Under the pieces are notes generated by a model, which saw nothing but the letters and a program-made list of their open reading frames with translations, was not told where the DNA came from and did not search any database. Below, piece by piece: positions 17,352 to 64,000 of a stretch of DNA of 64,000 nt. Source of the DNA: Lama guanicoe. Lineage: Eukaryota. Location: contig MU057352.1 in the NCBI GenBank assembly GCA_013239625.1, forward strand, positions 32,247,277 to 32,311,276, read 5' to 3'. Each line of letters opens with the position of its first letter. Position 1 is the first letter of the stretch. The translations under genes were made by a program, and so were the position numbers.

Positions 17352-17652
17352 TCCCACCATGATCACCACNNNNNNNNNNNNNNNNNNNNNNNNNNNNNNN
17401 NNNNNNNNNNNNNNNNNNNNNNNNNNNNNNNNNNNNNNNNNNNNNNNNNNNNNNNNNNNNNNNNNNNNNNNNNNNNNNNNNNNNNNNNNNNNNNNNNNNN
17501 NNNNNNNNNNNNNNNNNNNNNNNNNNNNNNNNNNNNNNNACCATCGGCACCATCAGCACCATCACCACCACCACCATCACCATCAGCACCATCACCACCA
17601 TCACCTTCAGCACCATCAGCACCGTCACCATCAGCACCATCACCACCATCAG
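17352..17652. repeat. (CAC/CAT/CAG)n imperfect trinucleotide repeat spanning the gap
   Basis: caccatcagcaccatcaccaccac units after the gap; a short caccatgatcaccac before it. Confidence 0.9.
17370..17539. other. Assembly gap (170 N)
   Basis: Run of n characters flanked by CAC/CAT repeat. Confidence 1.
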
Positions 17653-21399: not shown

Positions 21400-24300
21400 T
21401 CTGATTTTACCTTGAATTACGCGTTTAGGAACGCCCCCCTTCTCTGGTCTACAGGGGGGCTTGTACAAGACTGGCTTTCTTGCCTGAACGTTGGGCAGAA
21501 CACACTTAAAAGAACAACAGGGCTCAGTGTTTCTACGGTGGAAGGGTCTGCCCTACCGACGCAGTTCCTTCCGTGGTCGCAGAACCACTGACCTGTTCAG
21601 TCCTCAGTCAACGCTGGCAAATTGTACTTTTCTAGGAATCTGTCCATTTTTTTTCTAAGTTTCCCAACTTGTTGGCATAAGATGGTTCACAGAATTCTCT
21701 TATTATTTGGGAATTTCTGCTCTTTCACTGCTGAATCCATCTTGCTAACGGTTAGTCTGCTTTCATGGTCTTTCCACAGAACCAGCTCTTGCTTCATGCA
21801 GACGCTGTTGTAACTTAATCAATTCTGCTTTGTCTCTATAATCCTCTTCCTTCTAATTTCTCAGGGTTTATTCTATCATCCTTTTGCTTTTAATTAATGT
21901 CTTTTTAATATCTTAATTCATTAATTTCCAGCCTTTCTTCTTTTGTTGTATAAGCATTTAAGGCTGTTAATTTCCTTTGAAGTACCCCACAGATTTTGAT
22001 ATGCAGCATTTTCATTATTATTCGATCATGTCTTTTTTGCATAGCCATTAATGATTTCTTCTTCGACCTCTGAGTTATTTAGAACAGCTTTTAAATTTCC
22101 TGACACACAAGGAATTTTTTCTTTTTGTGCCATTGATACCTAATGATGGCATTTTCCTAATGGCATGTTCTAGTAGCTGCAGCTTCTTACAAATTCCTGA
22201 TTCTCTGAAGTCTGGCGACACTTGCTTCACGACCTAATACGCAATCAAAGTCTGTAGCCGTCCCAGGTGTCCTGGAGAAGATGGTGTCCTTCACGTGCTC
22301 AGCGCAGGGTTCCGTTTTGCTGTCCAGCAAGTCAGGTGCTGATGTTTACTGAGTCTGCGCTGCCTTCATGAATTCCTTACCTGTGTGCCCTGCGCTGAAA
22401 CCTCCCGCTACGGTGACGGAGCGCCCCTGCGGGTGGGAGGTTTATTTATGTGTTGACGTAGAGCTCTCTCATTGGGTGTGTACAGATTGAGGATTTTCCA
22501 TCTTCCTGATGAGCTGAACCGGTCACGAAGTAATTCTTGTTATCCTAGTGTATGTTCTTGTATGATTAATACTGGTTTTATATGTATATGTATAATTTGT
22601 CTTACTGTCCATCTTGTGCACAGCTGGCCTTGCTGGCCACGCCCTCTCACAGACTCTCTGACTCGAACTTCTGTCTTTACACCTTCACGCTCACCTTCTC
22701 CACGTCCTTCTGTTTCACCGAATGTCTTGTAAACGGCAAAGGGAGGTTTTTTCTTGCAGCCTGACGGCCCCTGACGTTTAAGGGGCTCTTTCAATCCGTC
22801 CACGTTGATTCGCGTACTAGACAGGATTCCGGAGGTTTGCCTCGGTTTTCTGCTGGTCCTAGTTTTTCCTTCTACATTATTTTAGTGTCTCTCTCTCCCT
22901 TTCCTTTTCCTTTTGCTCAGTAAGGGCTTCTGTTGGTTTCCTCATGCTCCTGTCCCACTCTTCCTGGTCTGGAAGTCACAGAGGTCACTGCCGCCTTCTG
23001 TTTCACTGTGTTTTCCACTGGAGCCTCGTGCGTGCGTGTAGGTCGTGATAAGTCATCACACAGGCAGGTCTGTGTGCTCACCCTGGCGATCAGACACAGA
23101 GTGGGCCCAGCACTTCAGGGGTCCTTCCTGCTGCCCTGGGGTTGCATCCTCCCAGCCCACCCCCCAAGCCCTGTTTCCATCTCCACCATCATGTGCCTTA
23201 GAGGATGTCGCACCCGTGGAATCACACAGCATGGGACCTGCGAGACAGGCTTCACACTGAGCAGAAATGCCCTCAGAACCTTCCACGCTGTTCGTCCGTT
23301 TTGTTGCTGAGTAGTAAGCATTTCATGATGTGGACACACCATAGTTTACCCCCAGAAGACATCTGGATTATTTCTGACTTGCGCTGTTACAAATAAAGAT
23401 ACCCTGAACATTTGTGCACAGGTGTTTGTGTAAACACAACTGTTTATTTCTCTAGGGTAAATGCACAGGAGTGTGACTGCTGAGAAATATGGCTGGTGCA
23501 GAGTTAGTTTTTTAAGAAACCACCGAAGTGTCTTCAGAGTAGCTGCACCACTTTGCATCCCTGCCAGCAGTATGTGAACGGCCCGCTTTATCTGTGTCGT
23601 TGTAGCTCTTATTTCAGCCATTCGAGCAGGTGTGCGGTTGCCTCTCATTATGGTTTTAATTGGCATTTCTCTAATGGCTTTTAAGATACTTATTTGCTAT
23701 TCATATACCTTCTTCGGTGAAAGGTCTGCTCAAATCTTTTGCCAAATTTCTAATTGCAATGTTTGTTTTCTTTTTTGTTGGATTTAGAGAGCTCTTTATA
23801 TATTCAGGATACAAGTCCTCTGTCAGACACAGGATATATAAACATTTTCTCCCCATGAGTAGCTTATCTTTTTATCCTCATTTGCAGAGCATGAGTTTTT
23901 AATTTTGATGAAGGAACCCTCGAGTTTTTACCATACATAGTTATAAACAGATGCCAAAATTTATGAGTATTTCATTTCCCTGCAAATAATGAGCTCAGAG
24001 TAATTTAATCACTCTTTGCAACTAATAGACTATCATTGTCCAGTTGTTCTCGCCTTTCTACAAACTGAACGTCACAAGTTACAGTCACAGTCATTGTTCA
24101 ATATGGAATGATTATCTCACACAGTCATTTGCTGGATTTGTCTCCCATCTACCTGTTCCTTGAGCGCTACACTGCAGACCTGGCTTTGAGGATTATTCTC
24201 CACCCCGAGTCCATCCTTCAGAAGCTCCTTTAGTGAAAGTCTCTTGGTGGCAACCCGCCAAGCTTTCACTTGTATAAAAACGTCTGTATTTTGTCTTAGC

Positions 24301-24800
24301 TCTTGAGATGGTTTTGCTGGGGGTCAACTGCAGGGTGACAGTTCCTCTCTCTCGCCCTTGGTATCTCTGACCATTTCCTGGCATCCACTGCTGCTGCTGG
24401 GACTGAGCTGGGAGCAGGGCTGTCACCCTCCCTCCCCCAGGGCCCAGGTTTCCCGGGATGCACGTCGCTGCTCCGTGTCAGCCCTGCCTCCCAGGCCAGG
24501 CGGGACCTCCTCACGCGCTGCCTGGGACTCCACTCAGACCTGCGAGGATTTCTGACTCTATTCCCCCTACCTCTTCACTGCTGTCCCTGTCTCCACTTTC
24601 TCACCTCCCCACAGCACTGTAATGTCTTCAGATACACCTCCTACCCTGCTGCCTCTCACGTCACCTGTGACCAAGTGTGTGCCTGGCCCTCCATGGAGTT
24701 CCATCACTGATCTTTTCCAGACACACTGGGTCACTTTTGATCATCTCTTATTATTACTAATTTCTGTGATTTCATCTTATTCTAAAAGTATTTCTTAGAA
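21400..24800 (-). mobile_element. Cluster of degenerate antisense LINE-1 fragments (ORF2 and L1MB/ME-like 3' end)
   Basis: T-rich sequence with L1 antisense motifs, e.g. 'aaggctgttaatttcctttgaagtac' ~21960, 'tttctctagggtaaatgcacaggagtgtgactgctgag' ~23450 and 'ttatggttttaattggcatttctctaatg' ~23650. Confidence 0.78.
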
Positions 24801-27655: not shown

Positions 27656-28164
27656 ACGGCATCCTGCCCTGTCCACTACCAAGGAGCAGGCGCACACGCG
27701 TGTGGGTGTGTGTCCAACTGCAGATACAAAACCAAGAGCCATGACTCCAGCCCAGCCCCCGAGTCCATACACCCATGGAGAAGGAGAGGCTTCCAGGAGT
27801 CACTTCGGGGCACACGCTGGGGCCCAGCCAGCCACATTTCCAGGGTCCCAGCACCCAAGGCAGACGTTTGGGGGTGCTGCACCCCACGTGCATCTTCCCG
27901 CAGCAACACTAGCGGGCATCTGCGGAGTGGGCCGTGCTCTGTGCTCCAGGGCGCTCGCCCCGCGGGTCAGAGAGCAGCCCAGGAGTAGAGGTGCGCTCTG
28001 CCCTGTCCAACCCACCATCCCTGCTGTCCGAGCAGACTTCGGCCCGGGCCCCCACACGCTGGCTCTCAGAGGCCCTTCCACGCGCGTGTAGTGAGCCCCA
28101 CAGACAGGGGCAGCATTGGAAGGGGCTGTCCTGTGTCCTCTCTGGCTGCATGGAGGTGCAGACT

Positions 28165-28745
28165 CTAGACCTCCTCCTCCACCTTCAGGATCATCCCTGA
28201 GAAGACTTCCAGGCCCGTGGGGGTGCCCTGGGGGGCTCCATCCGGCCCACAGGCTGTTCCGCCCCCAAGGGGGCCGTCAGGGATGGGGGGCGAGGCACCC
28301 AGGGCCGGGCGGGCCTCCACCAGCCTCTCCAGCGTTCGGTTGAGGGCCTCGACACCGTCGGCCAGCCTCTGGCTCTGCTCAGCCAGCCTCTGCAGCAGTG
28401 CATTCTGCTGGGCCATCAGCGTGCTCTGCTGCTGGGACCAGGAGCGCAGCACGGCACCCTGTCGCCGCTGGGAGTCCAGGAGCCTCCGCTCAAACTCTGA
28501 GGCCTCGGCCACCGCGGGCTTCCCCAAGGGCTGGGGTGCTACAGAGGTGGGTGGCGAGGGCCGGGAAGCCCCAGGGAATGCGGCCGCCGGGGGCGCTGAG
28601 GCTGGGGAGGCGGGTGGAGAGGGTGAGGAAGTGGCAGCAGGGTAGGCTCCTCGGAGGTCCAGGGGGTCGGCTTCGGGCAGGCTCGGCCCATCCAGTGTCC
28701 GCAGGGGCAGCCACAGGCAGCTGGGGGCCTCGTCCTCCTCGTCTG
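28165..28745 (-). CDS. Nested Myb/SANT-like protein, terminal coding exon (acidic/Pro-rich linker, PLDLR, coiled coil, ...MILKVEEEV stop)
   Basis: Acceptor gtctccccctgctag|cag| (NAGNAG, both phase 1) is in frame with the 35133 donor. 581 nt open to TAG. Heptad-rich EFERRLLDSQRRQ...LADGVEALNRTLERLVEA, typical of MSANTD/NAIF1-type C-termini. CpG-rich. Confidence 0.78.
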
Positions 28746-28974
28746 CTAGCAGGGGGAGACAGGAAACGTGAGCCCCATGGCCCAGGACTGGGAGGGCCAG
28801 GAGGGGCCACTCGCAGACGGTCCTGCACGTGCAGATATGGGGGTCTCGAGGGGCCCCTCTGTGGTGGCCAGCTGCACCCTCACCAGGACACCAAAGAGAG
28901 GGCGAAAGACTTCCTCCAGTAACGCCGAGACTGAAACTCAACCTGGCGGCTCCCAAGCCGGAATGCTACCACCA

Positions 28975-29255
28975 TGCTGCCATCTGTCTGTCCACCAGCC
29001 CACCTACACACGTCCACATGCTCATCCGTCCCCTCAGCTCGCTGCCCATCCGTTTGTTCACCAAGCATCCATCCAACCTACCCATCCCCTCCTTCCTTTC
29101 ATCCTTCCTTACATCCATCCGTCCATCCATCTGTTCATCTCTCAGCCAACCATCCTCAATCCATTCATCCTCATCCACTGTCTATCCATCCTTGATCCAC
29201 CCATCCATCATTCACCTCTGTCCATCCAGCCACGCGCCCATCCACCTACTTGTGT
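28975..29255. repeat. Degenerate (CCAT/TCCA)n simple repeat
   Basis: catccatccgtccatccatc-type units. Confidence 0.85.
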
Positions 29256-29825
29256 ATATACCTCCCAGCCCTCAGTCCCCCCACCCACCACCCAGCGGAC
29301 GTCCTGGAGGGATGAGTGGGTGCACATGGAAGCAGAACTTCCCTGGGGCGGCAGGAAGGGCCAGGATTTGTAGTCCGACAAACTGGGCCCCAATGCCAGG
29401 CTGTGACCTGGGAAAGCCCTTCTCTTCTCGGGGCCTCAATCCCCTAATCTGCAAATGGACAGTCTGGCTGAGGGGCTGCTAACCTTCCAACTGTCTGCGG
29501 GTGAAGGGTAAGCCAGCCCAGGACCCAGGGAGACCTCGCCAGGCCTGAGACACGGGCTGCGCTGGCACCCCGTCTCACTAGGCATTTCCCGACGTGCTGC
29601 ATGGAAGTGGAGGCAGGTCGAGGACTTCACACTGTGGCAGTAACTTTGACTGTACATCCTGGGTCTGAGCCCCCACCCAGCTCATCTATGGCACAGGGGT
29701 TCCTGCTTTGGACAGGAAAGGGGTGATGACAGCATCACCCCAGAGGACGGGGCCACAGGCCCCCGGGGAAGCGGGCCAGGGTTCTGAGCCCAATGCGTCC
29801 AAGGGCGCAGGTGGCTGCCGGTGCT

Positions 29826-29882
29826 GCCTCCTCCTCCTTCTCCTCCTCTTCCTCCTCCTGTTCCTCTTCCTCCTCCTCCTCA
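29826..29882. repeat. (CCT/GAG)n low-complexity tract
   Basis: cctcctcctccttctcctcctcttcctcc... Confidence 0.85.
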
Positions 29883-31623
29883 TGGTCACACCCTCCTCTG
29901 TGGTCCAGGAATCTGCGGTCCAGGCACCCACTGATCCTTCGGACTTGGCGGCCCTGGTGCTCTTGGAAGGAGCCACCCAGCCAGTACGTTGCTCCTTCTC
30001 GAGGTGAGATGAAGCTTTCTGGAGGTGAGGGCCCTTGGCAGGCACCACCGTTCGGAGAGTTCCCATTAGAGAGGCCAGGCCCTGGGCTTCCCATGAGTCT
30101 ACCTCGTTCGTCAGTTGCAACCTGTACCTTCACGCTGGGCGGCCCTAGAGGGACCACGCCTGACGCCCTCACATGCTGGCAGGTGGGGGCTGTGGCTAGG
30201 GCAGAGAGCCTGCAGCGGGCGTGAACAGACATCCTCCAGCCCTGCTTCTGCCCGATCCTGCAGGCAGGTCCCGCTTCCCCACTGGTGTGGCGTTCACCAG
30301 CTGCCAGTGAGGCCAGCCCCTGCCTCAGAAGTCTGATGGCCACCGACAGACAAAAGGGGAGGCCAACAGTGGGCCCAGCCTCCAACCTCAGACGATCTCG
30401 CAGAGTCTTGCGGCTGCCGGTCCCGCGTGCGCACTGCCCACCTGGCTCCCTGAGGGAGGGGAGGTGTGGGAAGGGAGCAGACGCGGTGCCAGGAGGGGGC
30501 CTGCCCTTTCCCACTGTTTGCCCCACCTACAGACCCTGCACGGTCCAGACCACCGCCCTGAGACCTCTCCTCCCCCCAGGGCAACTACAGTCCCCTTTGC
30601 CAGCACAGCTCTGATATCCTGAAGCCCCCACGGAACGAGGACCTGGTCCACATCTCTCCCCAGTCTCCACGCCACTCCCAACGGCACAGCCCCCACACTC
30701 TGCACTCCAGCCTGCGGTGTCCCGAGCTCACCTGGGCTGCCCCTCCTTTGGCCTCTGTCCTCTCCACCAGGACAACTCCTGCTTGGCGCTCCCCCAGGAA
30801 GCCTGCCCTGCCTCAGCCGGGCCAGGGCCCTCGTGTCACTGGACTGGACTGTCCACCCACCCCACCCCTAGGACGCACGCTCCCAGAGGAACAGGCTCTG
30901 CGGGGTCCATCTCTGCATGTCAGGGCGCAGCACAGAGCAGAGGGCCAGTGAGCAGTAGGGAGCCAGCAGAGGGTGGTTGCTGACCCCTCGATGGACGTAG
31001 GCCTGAGCCCACCAGGGGTTCCGGTACTGAACGTGGGTCAAGAGGCCCGTCATCGATCCCCGAGGCTGCCCTTGGCCTCGTATCAAACAAATAAAGGTCT
31101 GATCTTGTCCTCACTGAGCCAACTTGTCCCAAGTCAAGTTCTGCCTGCTCCAACCTGGGGGGGAGGCCCCCCCAGCTCCAGCCCAGGGCCAGACCACGGG
31201 CAGACATGGAGCCACACCTGGCCCAGTGGCAGGTGGAGGCGCAGGAGGCCAGGCGGCCCTCTCTGCGGCCCTCTCCTCCAGGAAGGCAGCAGACGAGGGT
31301 AGACCCACCCAGCCTTCTGAGAAAAACGAGAGAAGCCATGGAACGTCCTGCAGGGGCAGCTCGGGGATGCGGCACAATCCTGGGAGCCCCGGCCACTCCC
31401 ACAGCTGGCCACGCACCCCTGTCCTCTCGCTTGGCAGAGCCAGCAGGCAGAGACCCCAGGCCGCCCCCTCGGTGGGGGTGCAAACCAGATGGGAGGCGGT
31501 GCTGACCGTCCTGGGCCCGCAGCCCCTTCCTGTCCGCTCCCCATAGCAGTCCGCCTGGGCTCAGAGAAGACCCTGCAGACCTGCCCCTCCCGGGCCACGG
31601 GCTGTCCCCTCACACTGACTTAC

Positions 31624-31706
31624 TTGGTGCCGGCTGGCTCCGGCCAGGAGCTCGCTGGCCGCCTCTGTGTGTGAGGACACAGCCTCAAGGCCGGCTTCAA
31701 TACTAT
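31624..31706 (-). CDS. TSNARE1: TSNARE1 SNARE-motif C-terminal exon, (D)SIEAGLEAVSSHTEAASELLAGASRHQ
   Basis: Acceptor cttgatttgcag| and donor |gtaagt. 83 nt, phase 1 to 0. G+AT restores the D of 'IDSIE'. Read manually; it is not in the ORF track. Confidence 0.95.
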
Positions 31707-34700
31707 CTGCAAATCAAGACAACAGAAGCAGTTACAGAGTGGGGACCCTGGGGTCACCCGAGGGCGAGCCTGGGGAGCCCAGCCTGGGGCCGCGGGGGGC
31801 GGAAGCAGACAGCATCTGACCCCCTGGTGGTCACTCGGAGGCCCAGGCAGGAAGCCCAGCCTTCAGAGAAGCAGAGGCGGCAAGGATAGAGCACCGGCCG
31901 GGCCGAGCTGTAGGGCAGGGAGCCTGGAAGCACCCCCTTGGGGCAGCAGCAGCCCACTCAAGACAGGGTGCGGGCCTGGCTCTGCTACAACTCTGCACCC
32001 TGGGGGCGACTGCACAGGCTCACAGAGCGGCTGTGAAGACAGCGTGACGGGGTCTGCGAACACCCTCCTCTGCGCGCTGGCCATGGGTGTCCGGGCCCTG
32101 ATCAGCCGGTTCTGACTACCGTGCGGGGCTGAGTGGGGGACCAGGGAATTCGCCTGGTAGGTGTGTCAACACAGCCCCCAAGATGTCACACCAGCAGCAC
32201 ACCTGAGCTGCTGACGAGGTCCAGGGGCTGCCCGCGGAAACCTGAAGATTTCGCTCAGCGATGCCAGCGGTTAAAAGGCAGCATCATGTAAACCATGCAC
32301 CAGACCCGTCCCCACCCCACCGCCGAGGGGCATGCAGGGTAGTGGGGAGTTAGGGCTGCGGCACTCGACCCTGCAAGGAACCGGGTTTGAATCCAGGTGA
32401 GGACCCCCCTGCGCAGTGTCTTCTACCAATGAATGGGAAAGAGCCCCGTGCCCGCAGATGAGCAGCTGAGAGCCCGCAGCCAGGGGCGCTGCCCTCAGCA
32501 CAGACCAGCTGCTGCCGCTGCACCAGACGCAGTAACACGTGAAATGAACTCTTCCAGGAAGAGCAGACACGCCTCCAAATTCACACATTTTCAGAGCTCT
32601 GGAGGCAGAAATGGCTGGATTCAAATCACTCCTCTTCCTGCAGCTGTGCACCTGGGCGCCGCCCGAGGCCTGAGGCCGGCAAGGTCCCCTCAAAGGCGGG
32701 AACCGCCCCGGCTCGGCGTCCTGAGGCCCCGTGGGTGTGCTCCCCACCAGGAGAGGGTGTGGGCGGGCCCTCCTGGAGCTGGGGCCTGCAGGGTGCCTTT
32801 GCCGCCTGCCAGGGGCGCAGGCCTCCCGTGGTGCCTCTCCAGCCAGCCTAGATGAGGAAGAAGGAACGCAGCTGCCCCGAGGCAGGACCAGCCCTGCGGG
32901 GGGTCGGGGGAGGGCACCCACCCAGGCCCCCGCCCCTGCCACCACCAACAACGTGACTAGGAGCTACCTTGTGCTCCAGACTCTGTCGGCAACAACCTGG
33001 CGGAGCCCCGACACAGAGAGAGGTGGCTGTGCCTGGCGGGCAGCAGTGTCTGGGCCAGCCGTGAGCTGGGGTCACACTCCTAGCTGGCTTTTCGCTCTGA
33101 CCTGCAACCACACACGCTCTGGGCTGCGCGGGGACCTGCCCTCAGACTGCCCAGCCCTGGTCTGCACCGAGTCGGCGCCCCGCGGCAGGGAGCCTGACTC
33201 TGATGGTAGCGTACATCCCAGAGGCAAGCGCCCCCGGCGGCCAAGGTGCACACAGCCCAGAGAACAAACGTCCTGTGGCCCCAGGGCTGGATCGCAGATC
33301 TGCTCAGCCCCCAGATCACACACGGCTCCACCCTGGGACACCGTACAAGCAGACCCCTGGCTCGTGGCCAGCGACCCTCTCCTGGGCCCTGGGGGCTGCC
33401 AGGCAAGCGGGGGCACCCCACCACACGGCCTATGGTGCTGACGCCTCATTGGCCGCGGGCCACCCCCTTCACCTCGTCATAAAGATTCCAGGTTGACCGG
33501 GGACAGCCCTGCAAAGCCCAGTCCAAGTGGGGGGAACCCAGGCACAGGCACCCCTGGGGGGCCCTACACGCGGCCAGCGGGCTTTCCTCAGCCCTACAGC
33601 CGGGAGATGCCCGTACGCCGGGATCGTGCCTCAGCCCCAGGCCAGTGCCGACCCAGAGGGCAGCGCTGGCGGGGCTGGGCCTCCAGCTGTGGTCTCCACC
33701 ATCACCCCCAAAACCAGGCGCTGCAGCCACTTCCCTGCTTGGCCTTAGCCTCACCCCACGTTGCTCTCACACATTTAACAAATCTCAGGACCCGTCGGCA
33801 CGGTGTCGGCCACTCCCCACAGAGCTCACAGCACTAAGGGACCAGCCGGTTGGCTGCCCTGATGGAGGAGAGCCCGGGAGGGGAGCCATGGGGTCTGGCG
33901 GAGGGGGCACTGGCCCACCAGGGTGGACAGGAAGCCTTCTGAGCCAAGCACCACACCCAGGGGACAAGCGCAGTCGCAAGCTCCCACCTCACTCCAGGGC
34001 TGGGGGCTCATGGGAAGGTCGGAGCACCCAGGGCCACACCCATGCTGCCCGCTGCCCGCCCTTCAGCACCCCAAAACCAGGTCTGGCTATGCCTGTAGGA
34101 GAGCGGGTGGCCTCCCCAGGACTAACAGGTGGGCCCCACCCCACCCCATCATTCAGGCCCACGACCAAGCCCAGCCCAGGGCACGGGCACGTCGGGGTCT
34201 GCCTGCATCTCTGACTGGCCCAGGCTTGCTCTGCACAGACCCCCCACTAGAAGGTCTGCTGGGGCCTCTGTTGGTGGCATCTGGGGCCTCTGCTTGTCCC
34301 CACGAGGCTGAGTCCTGCTGTCCACTCTGCAGCCCTCAAGAGGGAGGTGGTCCTGCTTCTGGCTTCATCCTCAGTCTTCCCAGCAGCTCCCCAGGAAGGG
34401 GTGGGGAAGGGTCCAGCAGGACTCAGCTCTGAGCTGTGGGCGGAGCCGCTGCATGCAGACAGCAGGTGAAGGGCGCTCCTGACGAGGTTCAGAGGTGTCT
34501 TGAGGAGGAGGACGAGGAGCAGGCGGAGCGGGCAGGAGGAGGCGCTGCAGGCGGCAGGAGTGAGCCAGCCCTGCCCCGGAGTCAGAGGCACTGTGCCACC
34601 CGCGTCTTCTTCACCAGGTACAGACCCTTCTGAAAAGGTGGGCCCTGGAGGTGGGCCCACGGGCTCCGAGGGGATCAGCCTGCCCTAGGAAGCTAAGAGC

Positions 34701-35132
34701 CTCCAGATAGCGCTCTGGCCTGGCCTGGTCTGGGGGCTGCGACCCGGGGAGAGGGGCCCCCACAATGAGGGGGTCAGAGGGAGGGTGCGGTCACCCCTAC
34801 TCCCTCCCCTACACCCAAGATAGGGCACACAGCGGGCAGGGAGCTGAGCTGAGCTGGGCTGGTGACGGCTTTCCACGAGCAGTCCAGCGATTCACCTGCA
34901 CCTCAGCTCCTGTGGGTTTCTGGAGGCTGGTGGCCGCACTGTCACATGGGACAACCCCAGATGCCCCCAAGCCCGGGCCAGGGCCGACCTGACTCAGCCT
35001 CAGCTCCTGCACTCCCTGGTTTTGAGCCTCCATGCCCCCATCTAGATGCCAAGGGGCCTCCGCTCTCCCCTAATCTTGCTCTCGGCGGTCATGCGCTGGA
35101 AGCCCCTTGCAGGCGGTGAAGGGACCACTTAC

Positions 35133-35538
35133 TTGGCAGCGGCTCTGCGGCCTGGCCCTCGCCCGGGGGGCCCGGGACTGCGAAGGTCTCGGCCACCATG
35201 CGCTCGACGGGCGTGAGCACGGGGCCAGGGGCCCGGGGCCGCTCGGCCAGCTTCCGGCGCACCACGCCGCGCAGGTCCCGCCACTTGTGCTTGACGTCGC
35301 CCAGGTCCCGGCGGCAGTAGCCCAGTGCGTTCACCGCCTGCAGGATGCGGCTCCACACGCGATGCTTCCGGGCGGGCGGGCCCCGCAGCGCCCCGAACAG
35401 CAGCGGGTAGTGGCGCGTGACCCTCTGCACCAGCACCTCTGTCTCCTGGGGGCTGAAGTTGGGCTTCCGGGTCTTGGTGCGGGAGTGGGAGCTCGGCCGC
35501 AGGGGCACGCAGCCCGGCCCGGACAGCAGGGCCGCCAT
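35133..35538 (-). CDS. Nested Myb/SANT-like DNA-binding protein, coding exon 1 (Myb_DNA-bind_5/MSANTD/NAIF1-like). The full exon, from the upstream acceptor, spans 35133-35591.
   Basis: Strong Kozak gccATGG at 35538. Encodes RKPNFSPQETEVLVQRV...LLFG...RVWSRILQAVNALGYCRRDLGDVKHKWRDLRGVVRRKL, with the F/W/W Myb-SANT pattern. CpG-rich. Donor A|gtaagt (phase 1); upstream acceptor cctttccag| at 35591. Confidence 0.88.
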
Positions 35539-36847
35539 GGCCGGCTCGGGGCTGGAGCTCCGCTGGCATGTGGCTTGGCTGCTTCTGGACCCTGGAAAGG
35601 CACCAGAGGCTGAGTGGGCAGCAGATGGGACGGGCCATGGAGAGCAGGGAACCCCCAGAATCCTGGTCCCAGGCCCCCACTGCCCCCTGGAGAGGGTACA
35701 GTGGCCCCAGCCCAACGTCCATCACCCTAGAAACACCCACATCAGGGGGCAGTGGGGTCCTGGCTCCTGGCTACTCTGGTCCCCAGGTGCCCACCCCTCC
35801 GCCGGGCCCCTACACGGTTGCAGCAGGTCAGCCCTCTCCACCTCCCCACCGGGAGACGATCCCTTCCTGATCGTCCAGGAGCAGGACTGAGTGACCATCT
35901 GTAGACACCGGGGCATCCATCTGGAGTGTACAAAGCATTTTGCACACACCGCCCCAAGACAGCCAGCCAGAGGTGGAGGGGGGGGTCCTGCAAGAGGTGC
36001 TGTGAAGGGGTGACGGGGCGGCCCCACTGGAGCTGCCCAGGCTGAGGAGCGGGATCCCGTGGGAGCGAGGAGAAGCCTGCCAGCGTCACGGCCCAACCCT
36101 GTCCAGTCGCCCTCCTAGGGCAGGGGGGCGGCTGGGCTGCCCGCCAGGGAACAGCACATGCCTGGACCTCAGAAGCTCCACGGCACCCAGGCTGAGAGGC
36201 GAGAGGCTTATTCACAGCCGCGGGGCCCCTGGTGAGGCAACAGCTCAGCCCGGGAACAGGTAGAGAGGCTGGGTGGGTGAGCCCTGGGGTCCTGGCCGGG
36301 AGCTGACTGTTGGCAAGTGGCTCTGGGGACCAGGAGCCACTCTTCTAGGCCAGAGGGTGGTGAGTTCCTGCTCGGGCGCCCAGGGCGCTCAGGAGAAGCC
36401 ATATGGCCGCAGGGTGTGGGCACCGGGCTGGTGGGGCGGAGGCTCTCACGTGGAAGGAACAGCAGGAACAACGGCTCGTCCTGCACAGCCCTGTCCCCAC
36501 CACCCACGTTTCCTGAGAAGTGGCTGACGTGGTGAATCAGCAGCAGGATCGGCACTCCACGGTGGTGCCACGTCCAGCGCCCTCCGCTGGGGCACCCACT
36601 GCAGTCTGACGCCCCCCAGACAGCTGGTCCTCACCCTGGGGAGCCCCTGGCTGAGGAGGAAGGCCCAGGGCAGGGGGCACACAGGCCAGCGCTCCTCAGT
36701 GAGGAGAAGGGGCGGGCCAACCTCTGGCCTGGGTCTCCCTTGCCCGGCCTTCCTGAGGGGCTGGGGAGACACTCAGACCCCAGAAGCCGCCCCAGCCCCA
36801 CACCGGGGGGAGGGGCAGGTGGCCTGACAGATGGCGTGGGTACCCAC

Positions 36848-36920
36848 CGATGGCGTCTCCTTGCTCTGACACCATGGAGGCCAAGTCCTTGATGATCTGG
36901 TTCACATCCAGCAGGTCGCT
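36848..36920 (-). CDS. TSNARE1: TSNARE1 SNARE-motif exon, SDLLDVNQIIKDLASMVSEQGDAI(G)
   Basis: Acceptor gtttccacag| and donor |gtgggt. 73 nt, phase 0 to 1. Contains the Qa zero-layer 'EQG'. Confidence 0.96.
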
Positions 36921-61960: not shown

Positions 61961-64000
61961 GGAAAAGACAAGAATGGAGGCAGAGAGGAAGGAAAGGCCT
62001 CGCAGGGGCTGAGGTGGGGAGAGGGCCAAGCTGAGGACATGCATGGTTGGGGGTAGTGGGAGACAGTGTCTGAGGACACGCGTGGTGGGGGGAACACAGT
62101 AGACGATGTCCAGACGGAACTCGTGAGCCCGCCCCCCCACCCCTGCTTGGGTATTTGCCCTTTGGTCTGCCAGGGAGCACCACGCAGCTCTGATGCTACT
62201 TCCACAGCCACGTAGGTCCCACCCGGGAGAGGAGGCCATCGGAGTGGTCCCTACCAGTGTAGGGTCCCGCTGGAGGCAGGGTCCACTGAGACCTGGGCCA
62301 GCACAGACCTCAGCCTGGATGGAAGCTGCAGTCCAGCTCCCTGCATGGTGTCTGCCTTCCCCTGTGCCTCCCTCCACACCGCCAGCTCCCCTTGAGTCCA
62401 ACCATCACTGGTGACCCCAGCATGTTGTGAGGGGCCAGCAGCATGGGCCAGGGACCCAGCCTTGCACGCGAGCCCACACACTTGCTCAGAGGAGCTGGGA
62501 CGACAGAACATCAGGGCCTGCAGGCCCAGTGCAAGGGTCCCCGCTTTGTCCTGGAAAGAGACTCCCCCCCTGCCATGGACACAGGCTACGAGAGCTGGGT
62601 GTGGGCTCAGCCACGGTTCAGGCCCAGCATCAGGCTACACCATCATCACTGACCCACGCTGGGCCCTGGCCCTATGGATTCAGAGTTGGGCTCCCCGGAG
62701 CCTGGTGACAGAGCCCCCACCCACAGGCAGACGTCCTGCCCGGGGCTCCTGAATGACCATCCACTCCTTCAGCTACCATCCCAAGGAGCTCCAGCAGTGC
62801 CCCAGGCTGATGCCGACAAGCACGGTCCTGCTGCCGCTAAGTGTCACCTCCATGGACTGGGCCACCTCAGCCAGTCTGGGAGCGTGTGCTGAGAGGGCCG
62901 GGACAGGGTCCACTCTCGGGGGCTGAGAGAAATGCAAAGCCCACACCTATCTCACGCAAGATGAGCAAAGCAGGCTGCGCCTTCCCAGGTTCTTAGGAAG
63001 CTAAATTCATTCCATTTGAAGGGCTGTCTTCTCTGGAGACTGGATCCCGCCCACCGCAGGGGTACTGAGATGTCTTTTTTTAATAAAATGATAGTAATGA
63101 TGGATGGCAGTGTACTTTTTTTTATGTCTTTACTTGACAAAATAAAAAAGGAACTGGGAACTATCAACGTGGAGAAAACACAAACTTGGTGACCTTACGG
63201 TGGTCTCAAGTTATTTTAAAATGCTGAAGGTCCATGACGTGCAAATTCCCCCAGGGCATGGGGTCGTGGAAGGCTCCAGAAGGCCAGGCAAGCAGGCTAG
63301 GCAGCCTGGGCAGCAGCCACCCGGCAGCGAGGAAGGGTAAGAGGGTTGGGGGGCCCTGCGGGGGTTGGGGGAGGCTCTGTGTCGGACGGACAGGAGGGTC
63401 CAGAGCCAGCCATCCTCTCCAGACCCGCGCAGGGGACGTCATCCTCCAGCCACCAGGGCCACCGGGCGAGGCAGCCCACCGATTGGCCCTGGGGACGCCA
63501 CAACAGAGGCTCCCCCCAGACACAGGCGGCACCACAGAGATCGACCGCACAGCCCGGGAGCTGCTCCTAAGGCTGAAGACGGGGCCCGCTGGAGAGCGGC
63601 CAGCGTCTCCGCTCAATGATCTCACAGGCTCAGCAGCGTGTCCGCACCTCGGAAGGGCATGTTTTCCACGTGTGAGGGGGGCACATACACCCCCAATCCT
63701 AAGTGTAAAAAGCGGGATCCAGAACATGATTCACTTCAATCCAATTCTGCAGAACGCCCGTGGGTCTGAGAAGAGGCTGGCAGGAAACACCGAAACGTTC
63801 ACGGCGCTGCCTCAGACATCCTGTGTGCCCAACTTCCTACAACAGCGTATGTTACTTTCACAATCAGAAAACAATACACGTTACTTTTAAAAAGAAACAT
63901 AAAGGCTAATTAAAAATAGAGTTGCACATAAAATCTGCCCAGGGCCCACTGTTGCCTCGAGCACTGGACCCTGAGACTTCGCAGGGGTGGTCCCAGCCTG

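What the first reader, a model, noticed from the sequence alone, without database searches (positions are those of the whole stretch)
35133..35538. The intronic Myb exon looks like a paralog of TSNARE1's own N-terminal Myb exon, a possible relic of how TSNARE1 arose
Seen: RKPNFSPQETEVLV...RVWSRILQAVNALGYCRRD...KHKWRDLR.VVRRKL...LTPVERMVAETF...EG...EP. From memory, the canonical TSNARE1 N-terminal domain has nearly the same blocks (RKPNFCPQETEVLV, RVWSRILQAVNALGYCRRD, KHKWRDLRAVVRRKL, LTPVEQVVAKTF), but that exon must lie upstream of the Habc exons, beyond position 64000. Known: TSNARE1 is regarded as a fusion of a Harbinger-derived Myb-like gene and a syntaxin-12-like copy. Inference: the nested gene may be the complete ancestral Myb gene, still carrying its coiled-coil tail, whose Myb exon was duplicated and recruited onto the syntaxin exons.
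Basis: partly seen in the sequence, partly recalled or inferred. Interest (0 to 1): 0.82.

Follow-up and report, generated by a model that had tools for sequence, protein, structure and literature searches.

The report
Second Myb exon inside TSNARE1
The stretch is a real, conserved coding exon of the TSNARE1 gene that encodes a second transposon-derived Myb DNA-binding domain. It is a sister copy of the gene's known N-terminal Myb domain, is already in public gene models, and appears to be the older of the two copies.

Summary
Window 35133-35591 (minus strand) is a 459-nt exon with consensus splice sites that encodes a Myb_DNA-bind_5 domain (Pfam E = 7e-20). It lies between SNARE exons 11 and 12 of TSNARE1.

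- **Source genome.** The window is from a llama-tribe camelid. The exon and the downstream tail exon each differ by one residue from Vicugna pacos RefSeq TSNARE1 isoforms X4 and X6. Both isoforms also carry the N-terminal Myb, so the feature is annotated, not hidden.
- **Paralogy holds.** The intronic copy (N) and the N-terminal copy (T) are 68% identical over 117 residues in this species. They form an exclusive starred clade (96/98).
- **The origin story is only partly supported.**
  - N plus a conserved helical tail occurs in turtles, marsupials and placentals. T was seen only in marsupials and placentals, so T is probably a later copy of N.
  - TSNARE1 was already fused to Myb and tail modules at its 3' end in salamanders and turtles, which also have a third, MYPOP-like Myb exon (M3). 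T is therefore not how the fusion arose.
  - The coding frame is conserved upstream of the non-conserved ATG. That fits an alternative TSNARE1 exon better than an independent nested gene.

The parts
35133..35591 (-). Alternative coding exon of TSNARE1 ('N' Myb exon). It is 459 nt, phase 1 at both ends, and encodes 152 full codons plus two split codons.
   Evidence: Acceptor cag| at 35592 and donor |gtaagt at 35132. The translation differs by 1 of 152 residues from Vicugna pacos RefSeq isoforms X4 and X6.
35245..35469 (-). Myb_DNA-bind_5 (Harbinger-type trihelix) domain, residues 24-98 counted from the ATG.
   Evidence: Pfam PF13873, E = 7.1e-20. Many invariant residues are shared from tortoise to mammals.
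35536..35538 (-). It is not conserved.
   Evidence: Met here in the alpaca and horse models. The narwhal and opossum models have V, the monkey T, and the turtles I or V. The frame upstream is conserved.
36848..36920 (-). TSNARE1 SNARE-motif exon 11, 73 nt ([25 protein letters not shown]), ending in phase 1.
   Evidence: Sequence and splice sites. The exon length matches the 73-bp human core SNARE exon listed by Plooster et al..
31653..31706 (-). 5' part of TSNARE1 SNARE-motif exon 12 (..SIEAGLEAVSSH..).
   Evidence: Acceptor ttgcag| at 31707. G+AT gives D in the normal splice; A+AT gives N when the Myb exon is included, as in P0237.
28165..28745 (-). Tail exon, read in two frames. Frame B (entered from the N exon) gives T plus a 192-aa conserved tail ending MILKVEEEV, with the stop at 28167-28165. 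Frame A (entered from exon 12) gives a 68-aa Pro/Arg-rich tail without a transmembrane (TM) segment, with the stop at 28541-28539.
   Evidence: Sequence. Frame B matches P0250 with 1 of 192 residues different. Frame A matches the P0237 tail. Frame B is 67-73% identical across placentals and is present in turtles and salamanders.

Best explanation
Window 35591-35133 (minus strand) is an alternatively spliced coding exon of TSNARE1. It encodes a second Harbinger-type Myb (trihelix) domain, called N here.

The exon sits in the intron that splits the SNARE motif just after its zero-layer Gln. That placement comes from reading the sequence against the usual syntaxin pattern, not from a tool result.

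Public models use two splice paths:
- a) Exon 11 -> N -> tail exon, skipping exon 12. The second half of the SNARE motif and the membrane anchor are replaced by a Myb domain, a disordered acidic/Pro-rich linker and a roughly 60-residue helix. This is the layout of Harbinger ORF2 / NAIF1-type proteins.
- b) Exon 11 -> N -> exon 12. The frame is kept (phase 1-1), but 153 residues are inserted into the SNARE helix.

Either path should abolish SNARE-complex formation. Instead it gives a syntaxin-Habc protein with one or two DNA-binding Myb domains. This functional step is inferred.

Evolution:
- N and the canonical N-terminal Myb (T) are each other's closest relatives.
- N plus the tail is the older unit, at least amniote in age. 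The tail itself is at least tetrapod in age.
- T is most likely a copy of the N exon placed in the 5' part of the gene in the lineage leading to marsupials and placentals.

Shown: the exon, its domain, its splice sites and phases, the paralogy, the conservation, and its presence in gene models.
Inferred: its use in vivo in this animal, the direction and date of the duplication, and its function.
For: - **Exon and domain.**
- **Position.** Same strand as TSNARE1 and between exons 11 and 12.
- **Same-species models.** Vicugna pacos RefSeq isoforms X4 (P0250: T-Habc-exon 11-N-tail) and X6 (P0237: T-Habc-exon 11-N-exon 12-frame A tail) match the window at 151/152 and 191/192 residues.
- **Other species.** The same architectures are modelled in horse, meerkat, lynx, fox, whales, camels, primates, four marsupials and turtles.
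- **Conservation of N.** 74-79% identity between camelid and turtle over 105 residues. The frame is conserved from the acceptor, not from the ATG.
- **Trees.** N+T clade 98* in the quick tree and 96/98* in the careful tree. T is 95/91*. The sister group is an uncharacterised tetrapod Myb family, 97/84*.
- **N versus T.** 68.4% identical over 117 residues. The homology runs to within a few residues of the end of the N exon.
- **Distribution of T.** Absent from every turtle, bird and salamander model retrieved. In those models the segment before the T region in mammalian models joins directly to the Habc part.
- **Structure.** An AlphaFold model of the tortoise N+tail protein gives Myb helices and one helix at residues 213-275 with pLDDT 90-94.
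Against: - RNA runs hold about 30% of the words of 28100-35600, which does not resolve junctions.
- **Model support unknown.** The gene models are automatic predictions, and I cannot see what supports them.
- **An independent promoter is not excluded.** One Ensembl tortoise model (P0050, 325 aa) starts inside the exon.
- **Weak N monophyly.** Support is only 84/71. An older N/T split followed by loss of T in sauropsids fits the tree as well.
- **Absence rests on models.** The absence of T outside marsupials and placentals rests on annotated protein models, not on genome DNA.
- **Tail homology is weak.** The only sequence link to other Harbinger-type Myb proteins is one pairwise hit to a sturgeon protein, E = 1e-5. 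Profile comparisons were negative.
Confidence: 0.7

Rival explanations
1. An independent nested gene. A transcript starts upstream of 35591 and is translated from the ATG at 35538. It splices 35133->28745 to give a free-standing 328-aa Myb plus coiled-coil protein, as in the first reader's companion note.
For: The ORF is intact from the ATG, with a consensus donor and acceptor. An Ensembl/UniProt tortoise entry of 325 aa has exactly this layout (P0050). At about 330 aa, with Myb at the N terminus and a helix at the C terminus, it resembles other free-standing Myb_DNA-bind_5 proteins of 296-340 aa.
Against: The ATG is not conserved; other mammals and turtles have V, T or I. The 17 codons upstream are conserved in frame to the acceptor. 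CpG enrichment is confined to the exon, with o/e 0.31 in the 500 nt upstream. All NCBI models, including those for this species, join the exon to exon 11.
Confidence: 0.17
2. N and T come from two separate Harbinger insertions into the same gene, not from an intragenic exon duplication.
For: The locus has clearly taken up more than one Myb lineage. M3 is MYPOP-like and only 30% identical to N. Active Harbinger families can insert repeatedly.
Against: N and T form an exclusive clade with a long shared stem (1.56 changes per column, 96/98*). No transposon-like or other gene sequence falls inside it. Their similarity extends past the Myb core, through the LTPVE..VA.TF motif to the end of the N exon.
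Confidence: 0.08
3. A decaying relic exon that is no longer used, or a misassembled or displaced copy of the N-terminal exon.
For: Some lineages show eroded copies: P0075, P0132, P0098, and pangolin P0051/P0097.
Against: In this window the exon has no stop or frameshift. It is 98-100% identical over the Myb region to other cetartiodactyl proteins and 74-79% identical to turtle proteins. It differs from T at about a third of positions. Collinear models from more than 30 species place it between exons 11 and 12.
Confidence: 0.03

Closest known systems
TSNARE1 exon-4 Myb-like domain (the canonical N-terminal Myb of tSNARE1a/c/d; Smith et al. 2012, Plooster et al. 2021)
   Same: Same Pfam family. 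The two are 68% identical in the same species, share the same conserved blocks and the LTPVE..VA.TF motif, and each is carried by one skippable exon. They are each other's closest relatives in the tree.
   Different: It lies 3' of SNARE exon 11 rather than 5' of the Habc region. It splices onto a conserved helical tail. It is present in turtles, where T was not found. It evolves more slowly (stem 0.11 against 0.39). The papers I could search do not mention it.
NAIF1 and other domesticated Harbinger ORF2 (Myb-like) genes (Sinzelle et al. 2008; Etchegaray et al. 2022, PMC9392472)
   Same: An N-terminal Myb trihelix of the Myb_DNA-bind_5 type followed by a linker and a C-terminal helical region, about 330 aa in total. 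It is vertebrate-specific and conserved under constraint.
   Different: It is not a free-standing gene here but part of TSNARE1 transcript models. NAIF1 was not identified among the 150 best hits, and only some of those were named. Tail homology to other family members is not shown. Binding to HARBI1 or DNA is untested.
Uncharacterised tetrapod Myb gene (caecilian LOC115083954; skink, frog and bilby LOC141496098 proteins)
   Same: This is the nearest outside family: 43-51% identity in the Myb region, sharing KHKWRDLR and RLTPLEKMVASTF. It is sister to N+T at 97/84*.
   Different: A separate locus. The proteins are longer (446-755 aa), with a different coiled-coil and an AT-hook-like C terminus.
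M3, the MYPOP-like Myb exon of salamander and turtle TSNARE1
   Same: It lies in the same gene on the same strand and also splices in phase 1 onto the same tail exon.
   Different: Only about 30% identical to N. It groups with a MYPOP-like protein (P0159, recognised from memory, not looked up), not with N/T. tblastn finds no remnant in this window.

Membership tests
Pfam Myb_DNA-bind_5 (PF13873), the Harbinger-type Myb/SANT-like trihelix | Full-length match to the family profile above the gathering score | tested here: met
   71.2 bits against a cut-off of 21.7, E = 7.1e-20, profile positions 1-77 of 78.
Paralog of the TSNARE1 N-terminal Myb exon | Closest relative is the T-type domain, to the exclusion of other family members | tested here: met
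   N+T clade at 98* and 96/98*. 68.4% identity over 117 residues with the same-species T.
Paralog of the TSNARE1 N-terminal Myb exon | Both copies present in the same genome and locus | tested here: met
   Single RefSeq proteins of Vicugna pacos (P0237, P0250), and of horse, meerkat, opossum and others, carry both T and N. Tamarin has both on one chromosome record. The T exon's DNA in this assembly was not read, because it lies outside the window.
Alternative exon of TSNARE1 | Same strand, inside the gene, with consensus splice sites and compatible phases | tested here: met
   Acceptor at 35592, donor at 35132, 459 nt, phase 1-1. Exon 11 ends in phase 1. Exon 12 and the tail exon each supply the last two bases of the split codon.
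Alternative exon of TSNARE1 | Junctions seen in RNA of this organism | tested here: inconclusive
Only automatic gene models support the junctions.
Independent nested protein-coding gene | Conserved start codon and its own promoter | tested here: not met
   The ATG is not conserved, and the frame is conserved upstream to the acceptor. No CpG island lies upstream. Promoter activity itself cannot be tested here.
Domesticated Harbinger ORF2 (NAIF1-like) unit | Myb trihelix plus a C-terminal helical or coiled-coil region in one product | tested here: met
   N exon plus tail in P0250, P0050 and P0222. The AlphaFold model has a helix at 213-275 with pLDDT 90-94.
Domesticated Harbinger ORF2 (NAIF1-like) unit | Demonstrable relation to a transposon-encoded Myb-like gene | tested here: inconclusive
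   There is collinear similarity to a multi-copy sturgeon protein: Myb 31% identical, tail helix 39% over 62 residues, E = 1e-5. Profile comparisons of the tail with other families were negative. No transposase-linked copy was examined.
Domesticated Harbinger ORF2 (NAIF1-like) unit | Binds DNA and HARBI1 or the transposase | not testable with these tools
   Needs experiments.

The most novel reading that the evidence does not exclude
The founding Harbinger capture in TSNARE1 was at the 3' end. There, a Myb plus coiled-coil module took the place of the membrane anchor, an arrangement still intact in salamanders and turtles.

Mammals then changed three things:
- They lost the M3 Myb exon.
- They kept the N exon as a splicing switch that cuts the SNARE motif in half.
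- They copied N to the 5' end to make the 'canonical' Myb domain.

As a by-product of losing M3, the transmembrane-less tail that follows exon 12 is an out-of-frame reading of the ancestral coiled-coil exon. In this camelid that is isoform X6. Its equivalence to the 'non-TM' C terminus of the main brain isoforms described in people was not tested here.
Probability: 0.45. Interest if true: 0.65.

Novelty: new member of a known kind. Interest (0 to 1): 0.5.

Why it matters
TSNARE1 is a high-confidence schizophrenia risk gene, and the role of its Myb domain is an open question. The papers I could search treat the gene as one Myb domain plus one SNARE domain.

A second, more slowly evolving Myb exon changes how isoforms and variants in the 3' half of the gene should be read. 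It sits inside the SNARE motif and leads to a deeply conserved helical tail. Together these suggest a conserved switch between a trafficking product and a DNA-binding product.

For transposon domestication, the locus gives a datable series in one gene: M3 and the tail in tetrapods, N in amniotes, T in marsupials and placentals. It also gives an example of an exon read in two frames.

The claim should not be overstated. The exon is already in RefSeq and Ensembl models. What is new is the interpretation, not the sequence.

Tried and rejected
- **The look-up of encoding contigs.** No codon-level dN/dS, no nucleotide comparison of N with T and no synteny check could be done.
- **Read laying.** The local tblastn database was split around them, and exon 12 was read only down to 31660.
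- **Tail exon against Pfam.** Only noise was found.
- **Tail against the Protein Data Bank by sequence.** Nothing was found.
- **Profile-profile comparison of the tail.** I compared it with the C termini of five other Myb_DNA-bind_5 groups and a single MYPOP-like protein. The highest probability was 10.6%.
- **tblastn of the turtle and newt M3 exon against the window.** It hit only the N exon, at 30% identity.
- **MSANTD5 and MSANTD7 as possible names for a nested gene.** MSANTD7 turned up only in unrelated papers, two of them heat-shock-protein reviews. I take it from memory, not from reading those papers, to be another gene. MSANTD5 turned up only in two mouse studies. Neither lead went further.
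- **Smith et al. 2012.** The paper is not held, so I could not read it.
- **Rejected readings.** Misassembly and pseudo-exon readings were rejected on conservation and collinearity.
- **Joined exon model.** I searched the spliced model exon by exon and never joined the window's two exons. Where a joined product was needed, I used the public proteins P0250 and P0050.
- **Proteins that may come from human sequence.**
  - P0095 looked like a great-ape or human N terminus and was left out of every analysis.
  - P0057, P0059 and P0068 are T-type clusters, P0057 with very many metagenome contigs, and may derive from human DNA. They entered the first quick tree before I noticed. They were not used afterwards, and I did not search for more of them.
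  - I did not scan metagenome contigs, for the same reason.

Full report
**What is there**

Pfam assigns it to Myb_DNA-bind_5 (PF13873), the Harbinger-type Myb/SANT trihelix. The match has E = 7.1e-20 and covers the whole profile.

The exon ends at a consensus donor (CCAA|gtaagt; the intron starts at 35132). The frame stays open upstream of the ATG to a good acceptor (cctttccag|GG; the exon starts at 35591). The exon is therefore 459 nt, with phase 1 at both ends.

**Where it sits**

TSNARE1 runs on the minus strand of this window.

| Feature | Coordinates | Notes |
|---|---|---|
| SNARE-motif exon 11 | 36920-36848 | 73 nt, encodes [24 protein letters not shown] |
| N Myb exon | 35591-35133 | 459 nt, phase 1-1 |
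| SNARE-motif exon 12 | starts at 31706 | encodes ..SIEAGLEAVSSH.. |
| Tail exon | 28745-28165 | after a tag| acceptor; 192 codons ending MILKVEEEV after one split codon |

- The Myb exon lies in the intron that splits the SNARE motif.
- Exon 11 ends in phase 1. The Myb exon can therefore be inserted between exons 11 and 12 without changing the frame.
- Pfam finds nothing in the tail exon.

**Which genome, and is it annotated**

The word search with a turtle TSNARE1 returned RefSeq proteins of Vicugna pacos. These match the window almost exactly: 151/152 residues of the Myb exon and 191/192 of the tail. The window is therefore from an alpaca or a very close relative.

- Isoform X4 (P0250, 680 aa) reads N-terminal Myb - Habc - exon 11 - this Myb exon - tail.
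- Isoform X6 (P0237, 644 aa) reads N-terminal Myb - Habc - exon 11 - this Myb exon - exon 12. It then reads the same last exon in another frame, giving QTRRTRPPAACG...GPRHPPL. That is exactly the second open frame of 28745-28542.

The exon is not hidden. Public models treat it as part of TSNARE1. The same architectures are modelled in horse, Przewalski's horse, donkey, meerkat, lynx, fox, panda, whales, camels, pig, peccary, several primates, a squirrel, an anteater, a sengi, four marsupials and several turtles.

**Paralogy with the N-terminal Myb (T)**

Searches with the exon gave two tiers of hits. One tier is 73-90% identical: orthologues of this exon, which I call N. The other is 55-66% identical: the canonical N-terminal Myb, T, often followed by the syntaxin Habc region.

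- In the alpaca proteins, N and T are 68.4% identical over 117 aligned residues. The similarity runs through the LTPVE..VA.TF motif to within a few residues of the end of the N exon.
- In a careful maximum-likelihood tree of 51 domains, N+T is an exclusive clade (96/98*). T is monophyletic (95/91*, stem 0.39). N is weakly so (84/71, stem 0.11).
- The sister group is an uncharacterised tetrapod Myb gene, found in caecilian, frog, skink and bilby (97/84*).
- A larger quick tree agrees.

**Age and direction**

- N followed by the tail occurs in turtles. NCBI models of 594 aa in Natator, Chrysemys and Chelonia have the layout Habc - exon 11 - N - tail.
- An Ensembl tortoise model of 325 aa starts inside the exon.
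- Marsupials and placentals also have N and the tail.
- T was seen only in marsupial and placental proteins.
- Every turtle, bird and salamander model goes straight from ...RQGYQPL to ATQIDPNELQELF. In mammalian models, that is the junction used when the T region is skipped.

This favours T being a copy of N made in the mammalian stem. The tree alone cannot decide. Forcing mammalian N and T together, to the exclusion of turtle N, costs 1.2 log-likelihood units (AU p = 0.31).

**A third Myb exon and the original fusion**

Turtle isoforms of about 598 aa, and salamander TSNARE1 (Pleurodeles, 617 aa), have a complete SNARE motif. It is followed by a different Myb exon (PRKRKEKFSPVELEILVAEV...), which I call M3, and then by the same tail.

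- M3 is only about 30% identical to N. It groups with a MYPOP-like protein, P0159, which I recognised from memory and did not look up.
- tblastn finds no M3 remnant in the window.
- An acidic open frame at 29962-29810 resembles the first exon of an elephant model (LOC111748934) that splices into the tail. It also resembles the acidic end of the turtle M3 exon.

So TSNARE1 was joined to Myb and tail modules at its 3' end before T existed. The N-terminal Myb is a late addition, not the founding event. Whether M3 or N was the tail's first partner is open.

**Separate gene or alternative exon**

- The ATG at 35538 is Met in the alpaca and horse models. It is V in narwhal and opossum, T in a monkey, and I or V in turtles.
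- The 17 codons upstream of it are conserved in frame from turtles to mammals, with the motif TC[KRQ][RQ]S.SP[ED].A.
- CpG enrichment is confined to the exon (o/e 0.76). It falls to 0.31 in the 500 nt upstream.
- NCBI and Ensembl models join the exon to exon 11.

I therefore read it as an alternative TSNARE1 exon. An additional internal promoter is not excluded.

**Likely function (inferred)**

An AlphaFold model of the tortoise N+tail protein, made with an 18-sequence alignment, has these features:

- Myb helices at residues 27-102, with modest confidence.
- A disordered linker.
- A single helix at 213-275 with pLDDT 90-94.
- A short terminal helix.

This is the layout of free-standing Harbinger-type Myb proteins of about 300-340 aa. 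One sturgeon protein is collinear with it in both the Myb region and the helix. Profile comparisons of the tail with other families were negative.

Splicing exon 11 to N removes or interrupts the half of the SNARE motif after the zero layer. Such isoforms should not form SNARE complexes. They would instead be Habc-Myb proteins.

**Literature**

In the papers I could search, TSNARE1 is described as one Myb-like domain (human exon 4) plus a Qa-SNARE domain. It is said to derive from a Harbinger capture. A 2026 preprint calls the syntaxin part the Syx7'b/STX20 lineage, disrupted by a Harbinger insertion. I found no mention of a second or third Myb exon, nor of a conserved helical tail. Smith et al. 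2012 could not be read.

**Limits**

I worked beside those places afterwards.
No orthologous DNA, dN/dS or gene-conversion test was possible.
- The window's two exons were searched separately and never joined.
- A few T-type protein clusters that may stem from human DNA were left out once noticed (P0095 throughout; P0057, P0059 and P0068).

**Verdict**

The 'ancestral nested gene duplicated onto the syntaxin' story is partly supported: N is older than T. It needs correcting on three points:

- The unit is an alternative 3' module of TSNARE1.
- The fusion predates T.
- A third Myb exon complicates the origin.

The sequence feature is already in public gene models. The evolutionary reading appears to be undescribed.

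Noticed in passing
window 28165-28745 (-): One exon is read in two frames by RefSeq models of the same species. Frame B gives the 192-aa conserved helical tail. Frame A gives a 68-aa Pro/Arg-rich tail without a transmembrane (TM) segment, with its stop at 28541-28539. Only frame B is conserved as far as turtles and salamanders. Some whale and pangolin-like models switch from frame A to frame B inside the exon (P0093, P0020).
   Followed up: partly
P0272, P0315, P0330 (turtle and salamander TSNARE1); window 28746-31606 searched: A third, MYPOP-like Myb exon (M3) lies between SNARE exon 12 and the tail exon in turtles and salamanders. tblastn finds no remnant of it in this window.
   Followed up: yes
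window 29810-29962 (-): An acidic open frame (..EEEEEEEQEEEEEEKEEEAAPAAT..) resembles the first coding exon of elephant LOC111748934, which splices into the tail exon. It also resembles the acidic 3' end of the turtle M3 exon. It may be the last trace of M3. The sequence is low-complexity, so the match is weak.
   Followed up: partly
P0044 and P0045 (contig-derived proteins from other mammals): These are reciprocal N/T chimeras: the first half of N joined to the second half of T, and the reverse. The switch falls in the block that is identical in both copies (ILQAVNALGYCRRD..KHKWRDLR). This is either an assembly cross-over through long shared words or gene conversion between the two exons.
   Followed up: no
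P0075, P0132, P0098, P0116, P0082; pangolin P0051/P0097 and P0007: Eroded N-type and T-type open frames, with many changes to W, C or stop-prone residues and deletions in the tail. Some mammalian lineages seem to be losing these exons. Most of the species could not be named.
   Followed up: no
window 17370-17539: A run of N (assembly gap or masked), flanked by a short Gly/Asp-coding tandem repeat on the minus strand.
   Followed up: no
window 21900-24400 (-): An AT-richer block (GC about 0.45) with open frames that look like fragments of an interspersed repeat, possibly LINE-like. It lies inside the TSNARE1 3' region.
   Followed up: no
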